Shown: positions 6,781 to 44,347 of the stretch, one piece after another
Numbering within the stretch: the first letter of the stretch is position 1
How the letters are laid out: each line of letters opens with the position of its first letter
Assembly: GCF_006345805.1 (NCBI RefSeq)
Contig: NC_043017.1
Coordinates: 7,998,001-8,062,000 of the forward strand
From: Octopus sinensis
Taxonomy: Eukaryota
Direction: 5' to 3'
Length of the DNA: 64,000 nucleotides
Notes under the pieces: model-generated
Seen by the model: only the letters and a program-made list of their open reading frames with translations
Told to the model about the DNA's origin: nothing
Database searches by the model: none
Position numbers and translations under genes: made by a program

Positions 6781-7038
6781 TGGAGGCGCAATGGCCCAGT
6801 GGTTAGGGCAGCGGACTCGCGGTCGTAGGATTGCGGTTTCGATTCCCAGACCGGGCGTTGTGAGTGTTTATTGAGCGAAAACACCTAAAGCTCCACGAGG
6901 CTCCAGTGTACTCTTTCACCACTCTTTCTTCTGTTGGCCAGCGGGGTGGCGTCATTCGAAGGCTAAAGCAATGCAAACGCATTGTGACCAGCGATGTGTA
7001 ACAACATCTGATGTCTGGTTGGTCACGTGGTCACGTGA
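6781..7038 (+). mobile_element. Young, CpG-rich tRNA-derived SINE (family C)
   Basis: A box TGGCCCAGTGG (6792-6802), B box GGTTTCGATTCC (6835-6846). Body GCATTGTGACCAGCGATGT is shared with older copies at 35088-35370. Sits inside a TA/CA microsatellite. Confidence 0.85.
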
Positions 7039-8404: not shown

Positions 8405-8785
8405 ATACCCGATCACGCGGTTAAACCATTGGGAGTGAAGGTCTCCTAACCTTTGTTAGGGCATCCTTCTAGGAGAAGGTAACTGGGATAACTCCGACAT
8501 AAAACCTGTGGCTCAGTGGTTACCGATGATGTTGACTCGTTCTTCTTTTTGGATTATGGCTGCTGTTGCTTAGTGAGTGGGATTGACTCAGTGCATAGCC
8601 TTTCCTTACTTTAAAAGAAAATCTTCTTGCACAGGCATTGCACGATAACAACATTGTTCATGATTGTTGATGGTGCTGTGAGTCTCAACTGAATGGCAGG
8701 CTGTAGCATTAAAAAGCAAATAAAAGTCACATTCGATCACAGCACCAATAACAGTTAAGCTTCATGCAATGGCCATACTCGAGAA
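8405..8785 (+). mobile_element. Probable RTE-type LINE 5'UTR fragment
   Basis: GGGCATCCTTCTAGGAGAAGGTAACT resembles the motif recalled from RTE 5' ends; locally CpG-rich. Confidence 0.45.
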
Positions 8786-11638
8786 CGAGGGGGCAGCCAT
8801 CATGTATGTATGTACATGTGTATGTGTGTGTATGTTTATGTGTGTATGTGTGTGTGTGTGTATATATATATAATATATATATTTGCATATAAATATATGT
8901 GTAAACATGTAAATATGTATTTGGATATGTAGTATTCTCTTTTCAAACTACTTTCTTTTCTACTAACAACAACTACAGCTCCTAAATAATAAATATACAT
9001 TGGCTGTTAGCTTCAGACAGTATTTTTATCACCAGTTTTCATTTTGTTTTTGTTTATTTGTTTGTTCTCTCTCCTCTGTTTGTCATATGATAAATTTTAT
9101 AACATTTATGAAGGAGTCGTTATTATTATCCCAGCAAAAGTATGGAAGTTTGGAAAAAGAAAAGTAGTCTTTGTTTATAATGAATATCTAATGATATTTC
9201 GATGTAAATTTTTAAAATCATTCACAAAATGTTTAGCTCCTCTAAGAATACTAACTCAGTTTTCAACTCTGTCTTTATTGATTAGTTAAAACTTATGAAA
9301 TTTAATCTTGAACAATCCTGTATGTATGACACTTGTGAGATTAGTGTGTTGGACTATTGTCCATATGGCATAGGTACAAATTTTACTGTAGCCATTATGT
9401 CATGGGCTTGACCAAGATCCATAACTTTGCTAGTTTCAGTTTGGCTCAAATAGTTTGCTCGGGAATAGTGTAGGTTATGAATAAATAAATATACAGACTT
9501 ATATACATACTTATTTTGTCTCAGGAAATTAAGCCCAAGTAGCCTTGTCGATAGATTGGGGTGTGAGGGTTGAACTACTGGCTGGTTTCATTGTTATTGA
9601 ATAATTTATCAGGATTTGCTCACTTTTCATATATTTATTGAATGTAGAATAGATTCCATTGGTACTTTATGTTTGAGTGATTAGCAATATAGTGAGCATC
9701 TGATACCTGTAATAATAATATTGTAAAATAACCACTGATCTGTTACTGAAGTGCTAGTTCTCTATAACCTCTTTCATGAAGAGTAGTATATTATTATTAT
9801 AAAAATATCTTACTTCCAGCAGATTTATACATTGAAATACATTATAAATAATGTACTGTAGCCATATTTGAGTCAATGGGTCATGGCTGAAAAGAAAGAT
9901 TCATCTTAACAGACAACAGTTTCCTGATATCTTCTTTAGACCTAGGGTCTTATTTGAACTCTTACCCTTAGAAGCTAATAGAATGCCCATAAGTTACACA
10001 TAATCCTTTCTGCTTACAATAACAAACTGTAACTACCCTCTGTTACCTCAATGTGAAACTGGGCCCCTGGCAAGAACACAGCACAATGTTGATGTTGGTA
10101 CAGAAACTATTGATCCTTTAGTCAGTAGATTAATATGTACTAACAAGTTGACTAGTTCTAACCAACAAAGCTTTGTCAGAATATTCTTAAAGGGAAAGCC
10201 TCTGAGTAGTTATTGAACTTATTAGGAGTAGCAGCCAAGTCTTCCTTAAATTACTTCCTGTCATTTTAAAAACAGGACATATTAGAGAATGTCATCCTAG
10301 ATGCACCACATATGAATGAAAGAAAAGATGTTAACAGTTGATACACCTTTGAGTATAAGTCTGTTTGATTAGGGCTGACTTGATATCAAACATCAACAAC
10401 AGTTTGACTAGATGTATGAATTAATTGCAAATGATATTATACGTTACAAGAACCTATTCAAGGCAACTGACATTATACATTAGGATATTATAAATTATAA
10501 GAACCTATTCAAGACAACTTGTCAAAGCATGTATCTACCACTTGCATAGTGACTATGTCACCAATTACATTACAGAATATATACCTGCCATTCCATCTTC
10601 TCAAATTAGATACTATAAATTATTTCTGATATTATAACTGTGCTGTTTTATCTCCTCAAGATAATTGACATAATTGGTAAAATGGTTGCACAGCAAGTGA
10701 TAGACACATAGTTGTAGTTATATCAGCAAGTGTGTTTCATCTTCTGTCTCAAATAGGTGCCTATAATGCCTACTGTCAGACACTAGATGTAGTTGTTCAA
10801 GTATTAATTAAACTAAGCATCAGCATGAACTTTCAATAGTAATCGTTATCTGAAAGAACGTCCACTTCTTGAAGAAACTTTTAAAAATTGCAATGAAGAC
10901 CCCCTTAATTTCCTTTGGATATATTAATAACCTCACCTTCAATTAACTTCTCCTGTGTTTTTATATTTTGTTTTGTCTAATTTCATATTTCAGAATTGTG
11001 ACAATATTTTAATTCCGCTCTTATTCTTGTTTTATATATATGTATATATACATACGTATATATATATATTGTAAGCTAAAGGGCATATTTGATTACCTTC
11101 GATTTTTTTGAAAATTCTGTAATATTGAATTTATTGTTGATTATTCAAAAACTGTTATTAATTTGGGAAATTAGATATAGACTATATAAGAGAGTTCTTT
11201 TGTAGCTTTGTTTTATAGCAAAACTTAAATGAATTGACATTGAATACTGGCAGCATAGTAGTAAAATTGTGAAAGGAAAAAAAAAGGAATTTTTTTCTGT
11301 AAAGTTAATCAATTCTGCCTTTTATGCTGTTATATATGTATACGCATATATACATGTATATATATTTGTGTGTGTATATATATATTATATATATATATAT
11401 ATATATGCATGTATATGTATATCTATATATATATACTTATATATATATTTATATATAACCTATATCCTTACACCTCACTTGCACCCCTCCATGTCATGAT
11501 ATCACCTATATATATATATATTTATATATATATATCTACCATTATTTTTTTTCAAGTAAGCATTCGTTGTCACTATTTTTTTTTTCTTTATTTCTATTAT
11601 TTTTTTAAACCTTGCTATTGCTGCTTTGGTATCAACAG

Positions 11639-11653
11639 ACGTCACGCCGCCAG
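11639..11653 (+). other. Candidate 15-nt microexon of SCAI (ACGTCACGCCGCCAG)
   Basis: caacag|...CAG|gtaaga with a long upstream U-tract, TGC motifs, downstream TGCATG (11665-11670) and 3 CpGs in 15 nt. No transcript evidence. Confidence 0.55.
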
Positions 11654-11735
11654 GTAAGATATCATGCATGTTTTTGAACTCTTTCCATTGTTCCTCATCG
11701 TCGTACTGTTTTTGATATTCATTTATATATATATA

Positions 11736-12139: not shown

Positions 12140-12179
<40 letters not shown>

Positions 12180-12304
12180 GTATATATGTATATATATATG
12201 TATATGTATATATATGTATATGTATATATATGTGTATATATATATATGTGTGTATATATATGTGTGTATATATATATTTATATGTATGTATATATGTATG
12301 TATA

Positions 12305-12350
<46 letters not shown>

Positions 12351-12651
12351 TGTATATAATATGTGTATATATATATGTATATATATATGTACATACATAC
12401 ACACGCATACACATATACACACTCATACACATACTACTATTCTGTCTTCAGTTTCTTTTCAGTTTTTTCTTTTTTTAGAAACATTTTTTAACCATTCTGT
12501 TTCTTTGAATGATTTCTGTATTCCAATAGGAAGAACAATCTTGTGCATTATAATTAAACTCACTCTGTTTCTACTTCTTATATTCTTCTGTTAACTAAAC
12601 AATAGTTTATCTCATTTCCCTTTTATTAGTTCTTCAATTAACAATGCATTC

Positions 12652-12715
<64 letters not shown>

Positions 12716-12754
12716 ATATATATATATGTATCTATATATATGTGTGTGTATATA

Positions 12755-12800
<46 letters not shown>

Positions 12801-12804
12801 ATAT

Positions 12805-12835
<31 letters not shown>

Positions 12836-12894
12836 GTGTGTGTATATATATGTGTGTATATATATATTTATATGTATGTATATATGTATGTATA

Positions 12895-12940
<46 letters not shown>

Positions 12941-13250
12941 TGTATATAATATGTGTATATATATATGTATATATATATGTACATACATACACACGCATAC
13001 ACATATACACACTCATACACATACTACTATTCTGTCTTCAGTTTCTTTTCAGTTTTTTCTTTTTTTAGAAACATTTTTTAACCATTCTGTTTCTTTGAAT
13101 GATTTCTGTATTCCAATAGGAAGAACAATCTTGTGCATTATAATTTAAACTCACTCTGTTTCTACTTCTTATATTCTTCTGTTAACTAAACAATAGTTTA
13201 TCTCATTTCCCTTTTATTAGTTCTTCAATTAACAATGCATTCATTTCTAT
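12140..13250. repeat. Tandem duplication, period 590 bp (microsatellite + ~230 bp unique tail)
   Basis: ATACTACTATTCTGTCTTCAG occurs at 12431 and 13021. The unique tails look identical apart from a 1-nt indel (taattaaact vs taatttaaact). Confidence 0.92.
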
Positions 13251-19884: not shown

Positions 19885-19981
19885 GCCAGATTTAATGGTG
19901 AAGAAACTCCGATACTATGCACGGTTCATTGTGGTGTGTTTATTATTGAAGAAGATGAAGCTGGTACGAGATCTTGTGAGA
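19885..19981 (+). CDS. SCAI: SCAI exon (first confident exon in window): (R)PDLMVKKLRYYARFIVVCLLLKKMKLVRDLVR
   Basis: ttag|G...AGA|gtaagt; 97 nt, phase 2 to 0. Matches the remembered human SCAI segment RPELVVKKLRYYARFIVVCLLLNKMDVVKDLVK. Confidence 0.97.
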
Positions 19982-21370: not shown

Positions 21371-21469
21371 GAATTAGCCAAACAAATTGATGACTATACC
21401 ACCACATATGAACCAGATGATCAGATGGAATGGAATTTAGTTTTAGGTGAAATTAAATCCTTTATTGAG
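21371..21469 (+). CDS. SCAI: SCAI exon: ELAKQIDDYTTTYEPDDQMEWNLVLGEIKSFIE
   Basis: ttcag|GAA...GAG|gtaaac; 99 nt, phase 0-0. Compare human ELSDEIEDYTHRFNTEDQVEWNLVLQEVAAFIE. Confidence 0.96.
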
Positions 21470-27004: not shown

Positions 27005-27157
27005 GCTGATAATATAATAAGTGTCGTTGATGTTGACTCTTCCTCTATTGTCTTATCCCACCGACTGACTCCTCTCAACACCCCTCCTCTGGATAAGGGC
27101 ACTCCAGTATATTTAACACTTCAAGAGATTCTCATTGTAGGCAATTGTAATGAACAA
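27005..27157 (+). CDS. SCAI: SCAI exon: ADNIISVVDVDSSSIVLSHRLTPLNTPPLDKGTPVYLTLQEILIVGNCNEQ
   Basis: gcag|GCT...CAA|gtaagt; 153 nt, phase 0-0. Ends in the conserved LIxGNCNxQ motif. Confidence 0.96.
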
Positions 27158-28539: not shown

Positions 28540-29380
28540 AGTTAATGAGAATCTAACCAACACAATTTTAGAGAAGCTTCGATATGGTCAGTCAACCATT
28601 CATTGATACCTTTGTGCCATTGGAAAAGTCAGCAAATTGGGTCAATGGGTTCCTCACAGACTTTCCGAGTCTAATCACGCACAGAAAGTGAATGTGTGCT
28701 CTTCTTTGCTGTCATGTCTCACAAATTAACCTTTTTGGGATCGAATAGTGACTGGTGATGAGAAGTGGGTTCTCTATAAAAATGTCAAGCACCGAAGACA
28801 GTGGGTAGGGAAAGGAGAAACTCCAGCACCCACATAAGGAGGTCCTCCCCCACATAAGGTTTGGTGGGATATGAAAGGTTTAGTCCACTTTGACCTTTTA
28901 AACTCAAACTAAATGATAACAAAGGAGATCTACTGCAAGCAGCTTGAGTGGCTTAAGTCAGCACTAGAAGAAAAACGACCATCTTTGGTTTCAAGACGAA
29001 AGGTAGTCTTCCATCAGGATAATGCTTGGCAACATACAGCAAGGATGACATTCCAAAGGCTGGAGCAGTTTCAATGGGAAATGATACCCCACCATATTCG
29101 CCGGACATTGCCCCATCTGATTTTCATTTATTCTACAGTCTTCAAAATCATTTGGACAGAAAAAATATGAATTCTGTAAAGGAGATCAGGACAGTAGTTG
29201 AGGAGTATTTTTTGTCACGGACAAGTGAATTTTGGAAGAGGGGCCTTGCAAGTCTACCGGATTGATGGAAGAGCATTGTAGAAAATGAAGGGGAGTATAT
29301 TTTAGTTTAAAACATTATGTTAATTTTAAAAAATAAAAGAAGTATAAAAAAAAGCACATTATTTATGGGATGACCAAATA
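28540..29380 (+). mobile_element. 5'-truncated mariner (DD34D) transposase pseudo-copy in an SCAI intron
   Basis: KLGQWVPH, DRIVTGDEKWVLY, HQDNA and PYSPDIAPSDFHLF, with frameshifts and stops. Right TIR GCACATTATTTATGGGATGACCAAA+TA ends at 29380. Confidence 0.92.
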
Positions 29381-29838: not shown

Positions 29839-29961
29839 GTGAAATTTAGTGAATTAACTCTTGACATGTTCCGAATGCTACAGACATTAGAAAGAGAACC
29901 ACAAGAAGATTTAACAACTCAACTATATGATACGTCACCTGCCCCAGGAAGACAGCCATTT
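29839..29961 (+). CDS. SCAI: SCAI exon: VKFSELTLDMFRMLQTLEREPQEDLTTQLYDTSPAPGRQPF
   Basis: ttcag|GTG...TTT|gtgagc; 123 nt, phase 0-0. Contains the VKFSELTxDMFRMLQxLEREP SCAI hallmark. Confidence 0.96.
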
Positions 29962-33309: not shown

Positions 33310-33490
33310 GAAAATGGCGATCGTTCTATACGAAGAGATAACCCACACAAGTATCTGCTCTACAAACCCACATTCAGTCAACTGAATACATTCCTAGCGT
33401 CAGGTTTTAAAGAACTTCCTCCAAATGGAGCCCTTCTCTTGTATATATCTGCTGACGGTTGCTATGGGAATTCCAAACACACAGATGATG
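33310..33490 (+). CDS. SCAI: SCAI exon: ENGDRSIRRDNPHKYLLYKPTFSQLNTFLASGFKELPPNGALLLYISADGCYGNSKHTDD
   Basis: ttccaag|GAA...GAT G|gtaagt; 181 nt, phase 0-1. Contains NPHKYLLYKPTFSQL. The AAG acceptor is the nearest in-frame one. Confidence 0.95.
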
Positions 33491-34143: not shown

Positions 34144-34240
34144 CTGCCTACGACCTTGGAGGTGTAGTGACCAACAGTCGGCGAGAAGGGGACATATTAA
34201 ATAAAAACAAAAGACCTGGAAGTTTGAAAGAAATGCATTG
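34144..34240 (+). CDS. SCAI: SCAI exon: (A)AYDLGGVVTNSRREGDILNKNKRPGSLKEMH(C)
   Basis: ttgcag|CT...TG|gtgagg; 97 nt, phase 1-2. Compare human PYDFGGVLTNSNRD...KEMHC. Confidence 0.95.
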
Positions 34241-35984: not shown

Positions 35985-36066
35985 TCTACATCCAGGTGAT
36001 TTGTATCCTTACACTAGAAAGCCATTGTTTCTCATCTGCGATAGTGATAATAGTTCCGCATTTCAG
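35985..36066 (+). CDS. SCAI: SCAI exon: LHPGDLYPYTRKPLFLICDSDNSSAFQ
   Basis: ttcag|T CTA...CAG|gtatgt; 82 nt, phase 2-0. Compare human LHPGDLYPFTRKPLFIIVDSSNSVAYK. Confidence 0.96.
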
Positions 36067-36327: not shown

Positions 36328-37110
36328 TGTCTTTGCACAGCTTCTAATGCTGGAGAAGTATTACAGTGTCAGCTGTTCACTACCAGTGAACTAAGGTAAC
36401 ACCTCTTATTTTTCGTGTACCTTCCGGAATATTCAAGCAGTGCAGTTTTCTGCCCCTATTTGTTCCACATACTTCTCAAGATTTTTGCTCACTGTTCCCA
36501 GGGCTCCAACAATTATTGGTACTACTGCTACCTTTTTCATCAACCACAACTGCTTAACTTCCCAAGCTAACCTGTCATATCTCTCGACTTTTCTTCCTTA
36601 TCGCATACCTTGTTGTCAGCTGGGCATGCTATATCTATGATCCAGCATAGTTTGTTTCCTTTGTCAATTAAGACTATGTCCGGCTTCCTATTCTCTATCT
36701 CATGGTCGTACTGAATTATAAAATCCCATAGGATCTTTGCATTTCCATTTTCGATGATGCCTTCAGGTTTGTGGTCGTACCAATTTTTTGCTCTGTCAAG
36801 TCCATACTTGTTGCAAAGTGTCCAATGGACAAGCCTGGCTATATTGTCAAGGCGTCTCTTATATTCCTTCTGGGCTACTGGCATACATTGGCTGGTAATA
36901 TGCCATGCGGTTTCACCATTTTGTCCTCAGATTCTGCACTTATCACTTTCTGCTGTGTTGTCTATTCTGTATTTTATGTAGTTTGTTCTTAGTGCTTGCT
37001 CTTGGGCAGCACAGATTAGAGCCTCTGTTTCCAGTTTTAAATCACTTTTAGTCATCCACAGCCATTTTTTTTCTCTGTTTGTCTAATCTTCAACATCCCT
37101 TTGAAATGCA
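36328..37110 (-). mobile_element. 3' part of an RLE-bearing non-LTR retrotransposon (R4/Dong-like)
   Basis: KLETEALICAAQEQAL, zinc-knuckle CRI*GQNGETAWHITSQC, AQKEYKRRLDNIARLVHW, KILWDF, RKPDIVLIDK...IIDIACP and VPIIVGALG; ends in (AAT)n at 36311-36328. Confidence 0.85.
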
Positions 37111-38688: not shown

Positions 38689-38761
38689 TGTTTTCCTAAC
38701 CTTTTTGGTCAACCGCTTGTCTGCCTTTTGTCCCCTGAGCAGTTACCATCAACAATGCAAG
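38689..38761 (+). CDS. SCAI: SCAI exon: CFPNLFGQPLVCLLSPEQLPSTMQ
   Basis: ttcag|TGT...CAA G|gttagt; 73 nt, phase 0-1. Contains NLFGQPLVCLLSP. Confidence 0.96.
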
Positions 38762-39925: not shown

Positions 39926-40099
39926 ATCAACATCTGAAAGGCAACCTGTTTACTCTCTTCTTACACTGTCCCCTAATGGCATTTTGCTATGTATGCAACA
40001 TTGGGGACATTCCTATCACAACCTGGGACAAGTGCCAGAGCCATGTAGATAAGTTTATGTCAGAAGCATCCAAGTTATTTACTCGTTCAAGGAAATTAG
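39926..40099 (+). CDS. SCAI: SCAI exon: (D)QHLKGNLFTLFLHCPLMAFCYVCNIGDIPITTWDKCQSHVDKFMSEASKLFTRSRKL
   Basis: tacag|AT...TTA G|gtaatc; 174 nt, phase 1-1. Compare human DQSQRGSLFTLFLNNPLMAF. Confidence 0.96.
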
Positions 40100-41376: not shown

Positions 41377-41477
41377 ATCATTCCTTTATGCAGTTTTTTG
41401 GTGATGACTTTCTTCGTCTTCTACTGCTACGCTTTGTTTTCTGTTACATAGTCTTAATTCTACACCGTGGCTTCAAG
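41377..41477 (+). CDS. SCAI: SCAI exon: (D)HSFMQFFGDDFLRLLLLRFVFCYIVLILHRGFK
   Basis: cttcag|AT...AAG|gtagat; 101 nt, phase 1-0. Compare human DQAFLQFFGDEFLRLLLTRFIFC. Confidence 0.96.
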
Positions 41478-42322: not shown

Positions 42323-42475
42323 GGTCCCAGCTATTTCCCTACCTCTCACCCATCGTTACCAACAGATGAAATTCTGGAACATCCTTTGCTCTACAAAAGC
42401 ATGCTGGATCTAGCCAACACTTTGGACGTACGTGGTCTGTTTGCTGAGCCAGGAGACGGCGACACTTCCAACTGA
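42323..42475 (+). CDS. SCAI: SCAI terminal coding exon: GPSYFPTSHPSLPTDEILEHPLLYKSMLDLANTLDVRGLFAEPGDGDTSN*
   Basis: tgcag|GGT...TGA; 153 nt including stop. Compare human RNYPESYPQLPRDE...LELASILDVRNVF. The 11 exons total 1333 nt = 1 + 444 codons, in frame throughout. Confidence 0.95.
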   Translation, partial: GPSYFPTSHPSLPTDEILEHPLLYKSMLDLANTLDVRGLFAEPGDGDTSN

Positions 42476-43468: not shown

Positions 43469-44347
43469 ATATATACACACACACATATATATATAATGAA
43501 TATGTCACCAACAACCCAACAAGAGTTGCTGGTGACACAACTGAAGATTCTCTCTTCATGTAGTGTGTCGAGAGCAAGTCAGCTTGGTGGGCTAATTAAT
43601 CCCGATCCCGTCGATTGACTATGGCCGGAAAATTGCAGGTCCAAGGTATAAGTGAAGTGAAATGGCTCAACTGGAAATTGAAACTGGGGTTGTAGGTTCG
43701 GCTAGCAGGGAGCTTAGTGCCACTCTATGGAGCTTACCCACACATTACATATCAATCAATCAAAAATATCTATGCTTCATAAGTGTGATAAACAGCCAGT
43801 TTCTTGGCTTTTTCTAATCAGATGCATCTATCGATTGCTCTTTAGTGCTGTTGACTTATGCATCCACACATACACATACCTGTATATGTGTACACACAAA
43901 TACAGACACATATATCTTTAATATATGTGCATGCACACAAACACACATCTATGCCACTAGAAGCTCTTTAATACCAGTTATCAGCTATGTGACATTGACA
44001 TTGATGAATTGTCTTTATTTCCTCAAACCTCAGTCCTGGTATTTCAAATGATGACAAAAACAAATGCAACTGTGAAAAATGGAATTAAAAAAACAGAACA
44101 AAAAAAAATTATTGACCAGACCATCCTTAGCAGTAATGTCACTCTATGGAAATTGGTCTTCTGAAATTAGTATTCTAACTGACTGAACATGATCCACTCC
44201 TCTTCCATGTTTGCTAAATTCACATTTGAATTGTGAATCTAGTTTTTTCTGCAAGCACATACCTGTTATGTATGTCTGCCATGTCTCTCTTCTTCACACA
44301 CACATACTTATACTTATATATATATATATTATATATATATATATATA

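What the first reader, a model, noticed from the sequence alone, without database searches (positions are those of the whole stretch)
11560..11680. Candidate neural-type 15-nt microexon in a large SCAI intron
Seen: a long U-rich tract, then three TGC motifs (cttgctattgctgc) within 30 nt of an AG (11637-11638), the 15-mer ACGTCACGCCGCCAG, a strong CAG|GTAAGA donor, and TGCATG 12 nt downstream. The 15-mer holds 3 CpGs in CpG-depleted DNA. Established: bilaterian neural microexons are typically multiples of 3 nt, with UGC motifs near the 3' splice site bound by SRRM3/4-type eMIC proteins, and downstream UGCAUG is an RBFOX inclusion enhancer. Inference: it ends in AG, so read in phase 2 it joins the 19885 exon as AG|G = Arg and would insert ~5 residues (xRHAA) just before the conserved RPDLMVKKLRYY helix. 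That would be a possible brain-specific SCAI isoform in a cephalopod; I do not know of it from other SCAI proteins.
Basis: partly seen in the sequence, partly recalled or inferred. Interest (0 to 1): 0.8.

Follow-up and report, generated by a model that had tools for sequence, protein, structure and literature searches.

The report
Real, already annotated SCAI microexon
The 15-base segment is a genuine alternatively spliced microexon of the octopus SCAI gene; it is conserved in cuttlefish and already in public isoform annotations, but whether it is brain-specific is still untested.

Summary
Window exons 11639-11653, 19885-19981 and ten further exons, all with AG/GT borders, translate exactly to RefSeq "protein SCAI isoform X2" of Octopus bimaculoides/O. 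sinensis (..KED-RRHAA-RPDLMVKK..). Isoform X3 skips the 15-mer. Isoform X1 adds a second, 36-nt exon (IKWKENLCAQN) that lies upstream of the window. Assembled RNA-seq transcripts of the cuttlefish Sepia esculenta carry the same peptide; their 15-mer differs from the octopus one at two positions, both synonymous. So this is a coleoid-conserved cassette microexon that is already annotated, although I found no paper describing it. Its cis signals set it apart from the 11 other SCAI exons in the window: the best donor site, a weak proximal pyrimidine tract, a 76-nt AG-free zone, three UGC motifs at -15 to -26, and the only downstream UGCAUG. This matches the published code for eMIC/SRRM-dependent exons, but neural specificity could not be tested. 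The only run whose source I could trace is whole-hatchling RNA, and no skipping form appears among the assembled Sepia transcripts. A side result: the same phase-2 junction carries short, unrelated in-frame insertions in many protostome SCAI proteins.

The parts
11561..11636 (+). AG exclusion zone (76 nt) upstream of the microexon acceptor; contains the displaced U-rich tract (about 11576-11606)
   Evidence: This is the second-longest AG-free zone among the 12 SCAI exons in the window. Pyrimidine content at -22..-3 is only 0.60, tied for the lowest.
11613..11624 (+). Three UGC motifs (11613-15, 11619-21, 11622-24), 15 to 26 nt upstream of the exon
   Evidence: There are 3 TGC within 35 nt, against 0-1 for every other SCAI exon; the background probability is 0.0099. 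This position matches the published eMIC cis code (PMC8797185). Binding was not tested.
11637..11638 (+). 3' splice site AG (caacAG|A)
   Evidence: using this AG reproduces RefSeq isoform X2 exactly.
11639..11653 (+). 15-nt alternative cassette microexon ACGTCACGCCGCCAG, phase 2 to phase 2; adds RRHAA (residues 127-131 of isoform X2)
   Evidence: RefSeq X1/X2 include it, X3 skips it; the Sepia esculenta transcript 15-mer is ACGGCACGCTGCCAG, differing at 2 positions, both synonymous.
11654..11659 (+). 5' splice site CAG|GTAAGA
   Evidence: 11.7 bits, the highest of the 11 SCAI donor sites in the window (the others score 4.2-10.0).
11665..11670 (+). UGCAUG (RBFOX-type motif) at +12 to +17 of the downstream intron
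   Evidence: It is the only SCAI exon in the window with TGCATG within 100 nt downstream. There are 25 TGCATG in 64 kb, and the chance of one starting within 20 nt is 0.0075. Function is inferred.
19885..19981 (+). Next constitutive SCAI exon ((R)PDLMVKKLRYYARFIVVCLLLKKMKLVRDLVR)
21371..21469 (+). SCAI exon
27005..27157 (+). SCAI exon
29839..29961 (+). SCAI exon
33310..33490 (+). SCAI exon
34144..34240 (+). SCAI exon
35985..36066 (+). SCAI exon
38689..38761 (+). SCAI exon
39926..40099 (+). SCAI exon
41377..41477 (+). SCAI exon
42323..42472 (+). Last coding SCAI exon segment (the coding part ends at 42472; the stop codon follows)

Best explanation
Window 11639-11653 (+) is a genuine alternatively spliced 15-nt cassette microexon of the octopus SCAI gene. 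It sits in a very large intron: at least 11.6 kb upstream of it (running off the window) and 8.2 kb downstream. When included, it joins the upstream exon (which ends ..GAA GAC AG) and the 19885 exon in phase 2. It adds Arg-Arg-His-Ala-Ala to the linker directly N-terminal of the conserved PDLMVKKLRYYARF helix. These points are shown: the exon, its borders, its frame, its alternative use (isoforms with and without it) and its conservation at the peptide level between Octopus and Sepia. The following is inferred. The exon is too short and its proximal pyrimidine tract too weak for ordinary exon definition. Inclusion therefore probably depends on the very strong donor site plus an activator bound to the UGC cluster at -15 to -26 (the eMIC isoform of Srrm234), helped by an RBFOX protein on the UGCAUG at +12. 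That would make inclusion highest in neurons. I put about 0.5 on this regulatory part. The effect on SCAI function (a longer, more basic inter-helix linker) is unknown.
For: Exact gene model: 12 window exons with AG/GT borders translate to P0241 (XP_014777988.1 / XP_029649246.1, isoform X2) from RRHAARPDL to the C-terminus, and 11 exons translate to P0243 (isoform X3) when the 15-mer is skipped. Cluster members include X1, X2 and X3 of O. bimaculoides/O. sinensis and O. vulgaris CAI9738508.1. There is independent RNA evidence in another cephalopod order. Logan RNA-seq contigs L087 and L088 carry both alternative exons, and L089 and L090 carry the microexon alone. SRR19578103 is Sepia esculenta whole hatchlings. 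Octopus and Sepia 15-mers differ at 2 of 15 positions, both synonymous. Flanking constitutive exons are 82-90% identical at the DNA level, and the proteins are identical at 579 of 587 residues. The cis architecture is distinct from all other SCAI exons in the window and matches the eMIC code stated in PMC8797185: long AG exclusion zone and UGC close to the 3' splice site. The AlphaFold2 model places the insert in a low-confidence linker (residues 120-142, pLDDT below 50) between helices 100-115 and 140-164.
Against: No tissue-resolved data could be reached, so neural enrichment is not shown. In the Sepia cluster, 17 contigs carry both alternative exons, 2 carry the microexon only, and none is the skipping form. 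The one run whose source I traced is whole-hatchling RNA. This could mean inclusion is broad rather than neuron-restricted, although hatchling cuttlefish are rich in nervous tissue and an assembler keeps only the dominant path. Conservation of the UGC and UGCAUG motifs in other cephalopod genomes could not be checked: the O. vulgaris gene range is 271.5 kb and no DNA was returned. I found no clear yUnAy branch point in the AG-free zone by eye. RefSeq X1-X3 are 'PREDICTED' models.
Confidence: 0.9

Rival explanations
1. It is a real microexon, but broadly or near-constitutively included in cephalopods rather than neural-specific. The skipping isoform X3 would be the minor or tissue-restricted form, and the UGC/UGCAUG motifs would be incidental or serve general exon definition.
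For: All 19 assembled Sepia contigs covering the junction include the 15-mer. The one run traced to a source is whole hatchlings, not brain. The O. vulgaris annotation lists an including form.
Against: The UGC cluster (1% background) and the UGCAUG (0.75% background) occur together at the canonical positions, at the only exon in the gene that has either. A skipping isoform is annotated in Octopus. Assemblies report only the dominant path, and hatchlings contain much nervous tissue.
Confidence: 0.35
2. It is a chance juxtaposition of splice-like motifs in an AT-rich intron, and no exon exists.
For: Short AG..GT pairs are abundant: 5583 on the + strand and 6204 on the - strand at 3-30 nt spacing.
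Against: The exact peptide RRHAA is present in RefSeq isoforms and in Sepia transcripts. Only this site passes the filter chain.
Confidence: 0.01
3. It is a recursive splice site (ratchet point) used to remove the very long intron stepwise: CAG|GTAAGA at 11651-11659 acts as a combined 3'/5' site and leaves no trace in mRNA.
For: The intron is very long (gene range 271.5 kb in O. vulgaris). The sequence ..GCCGCCAG|GTAAGA resembles the ratchet consensus.
Against: The 15 nt are present in mature transcripts of two orders. The exon begins AG|AC, so no donor is regenerated at its own acceptor. An AG 15 nt upstream (11637-38) would be used first. The microexon could still help stepwise intron removal, but that is not its only role.
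Confidence: 0.03
4. The CpG-rich 15-mer is kept because it is a protein-binding DNA element: AGACGTCA matches the cAMP-response element TGACGTCA at 7 of 8 positions. It would act as an intronic enhancer, with the coding use secondary.
For: The 15-mer contains ACGTCA, and there are 3 CpGs in DNA with CpG observed/expected of 0.17.
Against: In Sepia the sequence is AGACGGCA, which destroys the ACGTCA core while keeping the peptide. The substitution pattern (2 of 2 synonymous) is that of a coding constraint.
Confidence: 0.02

Closest known systems
RefSeq/GenBank isoforms of cephalopod SCAI: O. bimaculoides/O. sinensis X1 (XP_014777914.1/XP_029649245.1), X2 (XP_014777988.1/XP_029649246.1), X3 (XP_014778064.1/XP_036367730.1); O. 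vulgaris CAI9738508.1
   Same: It is the same exon. Translation of the window exons is identical to X2, and to X3 when the 15-mer is skipped.
   Different: Nothing differs at the sequence level. These are automatic predicted models. No paper in the searched library discusses the exon, and no tissue profile or regulator is attached to it.
Vertebrate SRRM3/SRRM4 (eMIC)-dependent neural microexons
   Same: Length of 3-27 nt and a multiple of 3; frame-preserving; strong donor site; weak proximal pyrimidine tract; UGC motifs just upstream of the acceptor; long AG-free zone; conservation over hundreds of millions of years; location in a linker next to a structured element.
   Different: Neural restriction and dependence on an eMIC protein are not shown here. 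No vertebrate SCAI in my sample carries an insert at this junction.
Drosophila Srrm234-eMIC-dependent exons (PMC8797185)
   Same: It is a protostome and has the same cis features near the 3' splice site (UGC, long AG exclusion zone).
   Different: Fly eMIC exons tend to have weak donor sites. This exon has the strongest donor in the gene, which is more like the mammalian pattern.
RBFOX-enhanced cassette exons (downstream UGCAUG)
   Same: UGCAUG lies 12 nt into the downstream intron, the position from which RBFOX proteins are known to promote inclusion (established knowledge).
   Different: It is a single copy. Its conservation and binding are untested.
Short in-frame insertions at the same SCAI junction in other protostomes
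   Same: They use the same phase-2 junction (KE[ED] | R[PS]DLMVKK) and are often isoform-specific. Examples: Patella vulgata X1 +6 aa, Pomacea canaliculata X2 +7, Haliotis asinina X1 +15, scallops +2 (YG), the nemertean Tubulanus X2 +12, ticks +6, Tachypleus +5, decapod crustaceans +4, Macrosteles +7, Schistocerca americana X1 +6, and copepod-like sequences +5 (RSPHD, RYELQ).
   Different: The inserted peptides are unrelated in sequence. The mechanisms also differ: alternative 3' splice-site extension in annelid-like contigs, and a segment fused to the downstream exon (L003) or to the upstream exon (L085) in copepod-like genomes. Homology with the cephalopod microexon is not established.
Recursive splice sites / RS-exons in long introns
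   Same: A long host intron and a juxtaposed CAG|GTAAGA.
   Different: The 15 nt persist in mature mRNA, and the exon's own acceptor is followed by AC, not GT.

Membership tests
Alternative cassette microexon | Length of at most 27 nt (or at most 51 by looser use), flanked by AG and GT, and present in spliced mRNA | tested here: met
   15 nt with AG at 11637-38 and GT at 11654-55. It is present in RefSeq X1/X2 and in Sepia RNA-seq contigs.
Alternative cassette microexon | Both inclusion and skipping isoforms exist | tested here: met
   X2 (KEDRRHAARPDL) versus X3 (KEDRPDL) in Octopus. Only including forms were seen among the Sepia contigs.
Alternative cassette microexon | Frame-preserving | tested here: met
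   15 = 5 codons, phase 2 on both sides; the downstream protein is unchanged.
eMIC (SRRM3/4, Srrm234)-dependent neural microexon | [quoted passage not shown] | tested here: met
   3 UGC at -15 to -26, a 76-nt AG-free zone, a U-rich tract at -33 to -63 and a weak proximal tract. The code is as stated in PMC8797185.
eMIC (SRRM3/4, Srrm234)-dependent neural microexon | Inclusion enriched in neural tissue | not testable with these tools
   No tissue-resolved reads were reachable. The one run traced to a source is Sepia esculenta whole hatchlings.
eMIC (SRRM3/4, Srrm234)-dependent neural microexon | Inclusion depends on an eMIC-domain protein | not testable with these tools
   This needs knock-down or a minigene with SRRM4 or Srrm234-eMIC.
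eMIC (SRRM3/4, Srrm234)-dependent neural microexon | Deep conservation of the exon | tested here: met
   Octopus and Sepia have an identical peptide, and both of the 2 nucleotide differences are synonymous.
RBFOX-activated exon | (U)GCAUG in the proximal downstream intron | tested here: met
   TGCATG at 11665-70. It is the only SCAI exon in the window with one within 100 nt.
RBFOX-activated exon | Motif conserved in orthologous introns, and RBFOX-dependent inclusion | not testable with these tools
   No orthologous intron DNA was obtainable.
Recursive splice site | The acceptor AG is immediately followed by GTRAGT, so a donor is regenerated and no sequence is retained in mRNA | tested here: not met
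   The acceptor at 11637-38 is followed by ACGT, and the 15 nt are retained in mRNA.

The most novel reading that the evidence does not exclude
The phase-2 junction KE[ED]|R[PS]DLMVKK of SCAI may be a protostome-wide hotspot where short in-frame segments have arisen again and again, or may descend from an old microexon that was differentially fused to its neighbours. Two copepod-like lineages differ in intron position by exactly 15 nt, consistent with the second reading. In coleoid cephalopods it has become a two-step cassette (36 nt + 15 nt). The 15-nt unit would be switched on in neurons by eMIC-Srrm234 and RBFOX, tuning the activity of SCAI (a repressor of MRTF/SRF-dependent transcription) in the large cephalopod nervous system.
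Probability: 0.3. Interest if true: 0.5.

Novelty: already known. Interest (0 to 1): 0.3.

Why it matters
The finding matters mainly as a validation. A reader with no tools called a 15-nt exon, its frame and its inserted peptide correctly from raw sequence, and public annotation and cuttlefish transcripts bear this out. Biologically, it adds one well-defined exon, conserved between octopus and cuttlefish, to the short list of cephalopod microexons with a textbook eMIC/RBFOX motif layout. That makes it a convenient test case for whether the bilaterian neural microexon programme operates in cephalopods. The wider pattern fits recent claims that neural exons evolve recurrently at the same sites of the same ancestral genes (PMC8797185; bioRxiv 10.64898/2026.09.05.749416): many unrelated short insertions occur at the same SCAI junction across molluscs, annelids, nemerteans, chelicerates, crustaceans and insects. 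The exon itself is not new, so the finding does not change what is known about SCAI.

Tried and rejected
1. A protein search with the 66-aa two-exon query returned only short genomic ORF fragments. I wrongly concluded for a while that cephalopods were absent from the database. The tool appears to favour hits of similar length to the query: a 471-aa query found the full-length proteins, and a 207-aa query again found only mid-length fragments.
2. Exact look-ups of window ORFs found nothing.
3. An exact 20-mer scan of JGI metagenomes gave 0 hits.
4. I searched for the upstream SCAI exon and for the 36-nt exon in the window. Neither is present, so both lie upstream of position 1.
5. I tested whether the island 11455-11725 is a repeat. 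There is no second copy in the window.
6. I scanned annelid-like and other introns at the orthologous junction for a 15-nt microexon. No convincing candidate turned up; those lineages use an alternative acceptor instead.
7. I tried to fetch the O. vulgaris locus to compare flanking introns. The gene range of 271.5 kb is too long, and no DNA was returned.
8. I tried to trace tissues for the Logan runs. Only SRR19578103 could be traced, to Sepia esculenta whole hatchlings; the other accessions were not found in the library.
9. Rfam and tRNA scans of the window found nothing.
10. Rejected readings: chance motif, recursive splice site, and CRE-like enhancer (see rival explanations).
11. A literature search for 'SCAI' with 'microexon' gave 7 papers, none relevant. 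The 2026 bioRxiv paper that includes O. bimaculoides does not mention SCAI, and its supplements are not held.
Full report
OBSERVATION.
- a U-rich tract (about 11576-11606);
- TGC at 11613-15, 11619-21 and 11622-24;
- AG at 11637-38;
- the 15-mer ACGTCACGCCGCCAG at 11639-11653, with three CpGs;
- GTAAGA at 11654-59;
- TGCATG at 11665-70.

The exon at 19885 begins tttag|G CCA GAT TTA ATG GTG AAG, so its first base completes a codon and the intron is phase 2.

The arrangement is unusual for this DNA. The window has a CpG observed/expected ratio of 0.17, and only five places hold three or more CpGs within 15 nt. One is this 15-mer, one is inside SCAI exon 33310-33490, and one is a tRNA-derived SINE.

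I applied a filter chain for microexon-like sites to both strands: AG..GT pairs 3-30 nt apart, donor score at least 8 bits, length a multiple of 3, YAG, open in phase 2, and a pyrimidine window of at least 21/25. It left this one site. I set those thresholds after seeing the candidate, so I treat the result as illustrative only.

GENE CONTEXT. A tblastn probe with human SCAI recalled from memory (a lead only) located SCAI exons on the + strand from 19885 to about 42470. The exon that should precede 19885 encodes ..LRTSETNYLNE.F.FY.AIR.R.YYSKA.KE[ED]. It is not in the window, by motif search or by tblastn with five orthologous peptides. The candidate therefore lies inside an intron that runs off the 5' end of the window.

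IDENTIFICATION. My first protein search used a 66-aa query and returned only short genomic ORF fragments. Exact look-ups of window ORFs also failed. A 471-aa query built from the window exons then found full-length SCAI proteins.

The best hit was P0121, a 587-aa Logan transcript product that reads ..KANKED-R-IKWKENLCAQN-R-RHAA-R-PDLMVKK... Its 90% cluster contains:
- RefSeq 'protein SCAI isoform X1' of Octopus bimaculoides/O. sinensis (587 aa, with both inserts);
- isoform X2 (575 aa, ..KEDRRHAARPDL..);
- isoform X3 (570 aa, ..KEDRPDL..);
- Octopus vulgaris CAI9738508.1 (with RRHAA);
- a partial Sepia pharaonis protein;
- five more Logan products.

A spliced-model script showed the following. 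Window exons 11639-11653, 19885-19981, 21371-21469, 27005-27157, 29839-29961, 33310-33490, 34144-34240, 35985-36066, 38689-38761, 39926-40099, 41377-41477 and 42323-42472 all have AG/GT borders. Together they translate exactly to X2 from RRHAARPDL to the C-terminus. Without the first exon they translate exactly to X3.

The window is therefore an Octopus SCAI locus, and the 15-mer is the annotated alternative exon. The 36-nt exon (IKWKENLCAQN) is not in the window and must lie further upstream. The O. vulgaris gene spans 271.5 kb.

CONSERVATION. Logan contigs L087 and L088 read GAAGACAG|AATAAAATGGAAAGAAAACCTGTGTGCTCAAAACCG|ACGGCACGCTGCCAG|GCCAGAC. Contigs L089 and L090 read GAAGACAG|ACGGCACGCTGCCAG|GCCAGAC. 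Run SRR19578103 is poly(A) RNA from whole hatchling Sepia esculenta.

The Sepia 15-mer differs from the octopus one at two positions (CGT/CGG and GCC/GCT), both synonymous. Neighbouring constitutive exons are 82-90% identical at the DNA level. The two proteins are identical at 579 of 587 residues, including both inserts. This is the signature of selection on the peptide across the octopus-cuttlefish split.

The same comparison argues against the idea that the CpGs are kept as a cAMP-response-like DNA element. The ACGTCA core is lost in Sepia.

HOW IT PROBABLY WORKS. I compared this exon with the other 11 SCAI exons in the window. The microexon has:
- the strongest donor site (11.7 bits, against 4.2-10.0 for the others);
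- the joint-weakest proximal pyrimidine tract (0.60);
- a 76-nt AG-free zone;
- three UGC within 35 nt of the acceptor (the others have 0-1);
- the only UGCAUG within 100 nt downstream.

Background rates for the last two features are 0.0099 and 0.0075. Torres-Mendez et al. [quoted passage not shown] They place the origin of the eMIC domain in bilaterian ancestors. A downstream UGCAUG acting as an RBFOX enhancer is established knowledge.

My inference is that the 15-nt exon is recognised through its strong donor plus an eMIC-type activator on the UGC cluster, with RBFOX assistance, and is therefore most included in neurons. This step is not shown.

An AlphaFold2 model of the full-insert isoform (40-sequence alignment, mean pLDDT 75.7) puts residues 120-142 at pLDDT below 50. 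That segment lies between helix 100-115 and a helix modelled from residue 140 to 164. The insert therefore lengthens a flexible linker, makes it more basic, and may extend the conserved helix at its N-terminus.

CAUTION ON 'NEURAL'. Among the Sepia cluster members, 17 contigs carry both inserts, 2 carry the microexon alone, and none skips it. The one run whose source I could trace is whole-animal RNA. This fits either broad inclusion or dominance of neural SCAI mRNA in hatchlings, and I cannot tell which. I give the neural-regulated reading about 0.5 and the broad-inclusion reading about 0.35.

COMPARATIVE SIDE RESULT. JGI metagenome loci and the named proteins show that the same junction carries short insertions in many protostomes. 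Of 121 proteins surveyed, 50 have extra residues there, and these are often confined to particular RefSeq isoforms:
- Patella +6, Pomacea +7, Haliotis +15, scallops +2;
- the nemertean Tubulanus +12;
- ticks +6, horseshoe crab +5, decapods +4;
- leafhopper +7, locust +6;
- copepod-like sequences +5.

In my small sample, vertebrates show none.

In copepod-like genomes the 15 nt are fused to the downstream exon in one lineage (L003..GACAG|gt..48 nt..cag|GTCTCCACATGACAGGTCGGAT). They are fused to the upstream exon in another (L085..GATAGGTATGAATTGCAAAG|gtaagt). The intron position therefore differs by exactly 15 nt between the two. This is what differential loss of the two introns around an old microexon would produce, but intron sliding or independent origin are not excluded.

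In annelid-like contigs the extra residues come from an alternative acceptor 18-24 nt upstream, itself preceded by UGC-rich sequence. The inserted peptides are unrelated across phyla, so I do not claim homology. The pattern fits the 'hotspot' and 'recurrent neural exon' ideas in PMC8797185 and in bioRxiv 10.64898/2026.09.05.749416.

VERDICT. The exon is real, alternative, and conserved between octopus and cuttlefish. It is already in public annotation, so I rate novelty as 'already known' and interest as low to moderate. Its tissue specificity and regulators remain open and are directly testable.

Noticed in passing
outside the window (upstream of position 1); seen in P0242, P0121, L087, L088: A second alternative SCAI exon of 36 nt (IKWKENLCAQN) sits between the upstream exon and the 15-nt microexon. 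Together they give three annotated isoforms (+51, +15, +0 nt). Its peptide is identical in Octopus and Sepia esculenta.
   Followed up: partly
window 6781-6900: A tRNA-derived SINE-like element (GGAGGCGCAATGGCCCAGTGGTTAGGG...GGTTTCGATTCCC, with A- and B-box-like motifs) carries one of the five CpG clusters in the window. ARAGORN and Rfam do not call it, and there is only one copy in the window.
   Followed up: partly
window 8405-8424 and 43599-43617: Two further CpG clusters of unknown nature. The first lies near a tRNA-like stretch (ggctcagtggttac at about 8511). The second lies about 1.1 kb beyond the SCAI stop codon and may be in the 3' UTR.
   Followed up: no
window 12172-13148: Two ORFs about 530 nt apart end in the same 68-residue read-through peptide (..[38 protein letters not shown]). 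This indicates a tandem duplication embedded in TA/CA microsatellite DNA, in the lowest-GC stretch of the window (0.197).
   Followed up: no
window about 28600-29265 (+) and 36567-36884 (-): Transposon remnants inside SCAI introns. One is a mariner/Tc1-like transposase fragment (..HQDNAWQHTA.., ..DIAPSDFHLF..). The other is a retroelement-like ORF (..KILWDFIIQYDHEIENRKPDIVLIDK..). I identified both by eye only.
   Followed up: no
L003 (ENA ERZ17174923) 440-540 versus L085 (ENA ERZ17174865) 540-1110 and L084: Two copepod-like SCAI genes both encode a 5-residue insert at the same junction. In one the intron lies 15 nt further upstream than in the other, so the insert is fused to the downstream exon in one and to the upstream exon in the other.
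   Followed up: partly
L059, L061, L066-L069, L072, L074, L075, L077, L079, L080 (about 30 nt before the RPDL exon); transcript L007: Annelid-like SCAI genes have a pyrimidine tract and CAG followed by a 22-24-nt UGC-rich stretch (AGTTGCTGGTACTGTTCCTTGCAG) before the RPDL exon. One transcript uses an upstream acceptor and adds ISVPC(R). This is an alternative 3' splice site at the same junction.
   Followed up: partly
tool behaviour: the search for homologous proteins returned only hits of roughly the query's length. Short queries therefore hid all full-length SCAI proteins, including the decisive cephalopod cluster.
   Followed up: yes
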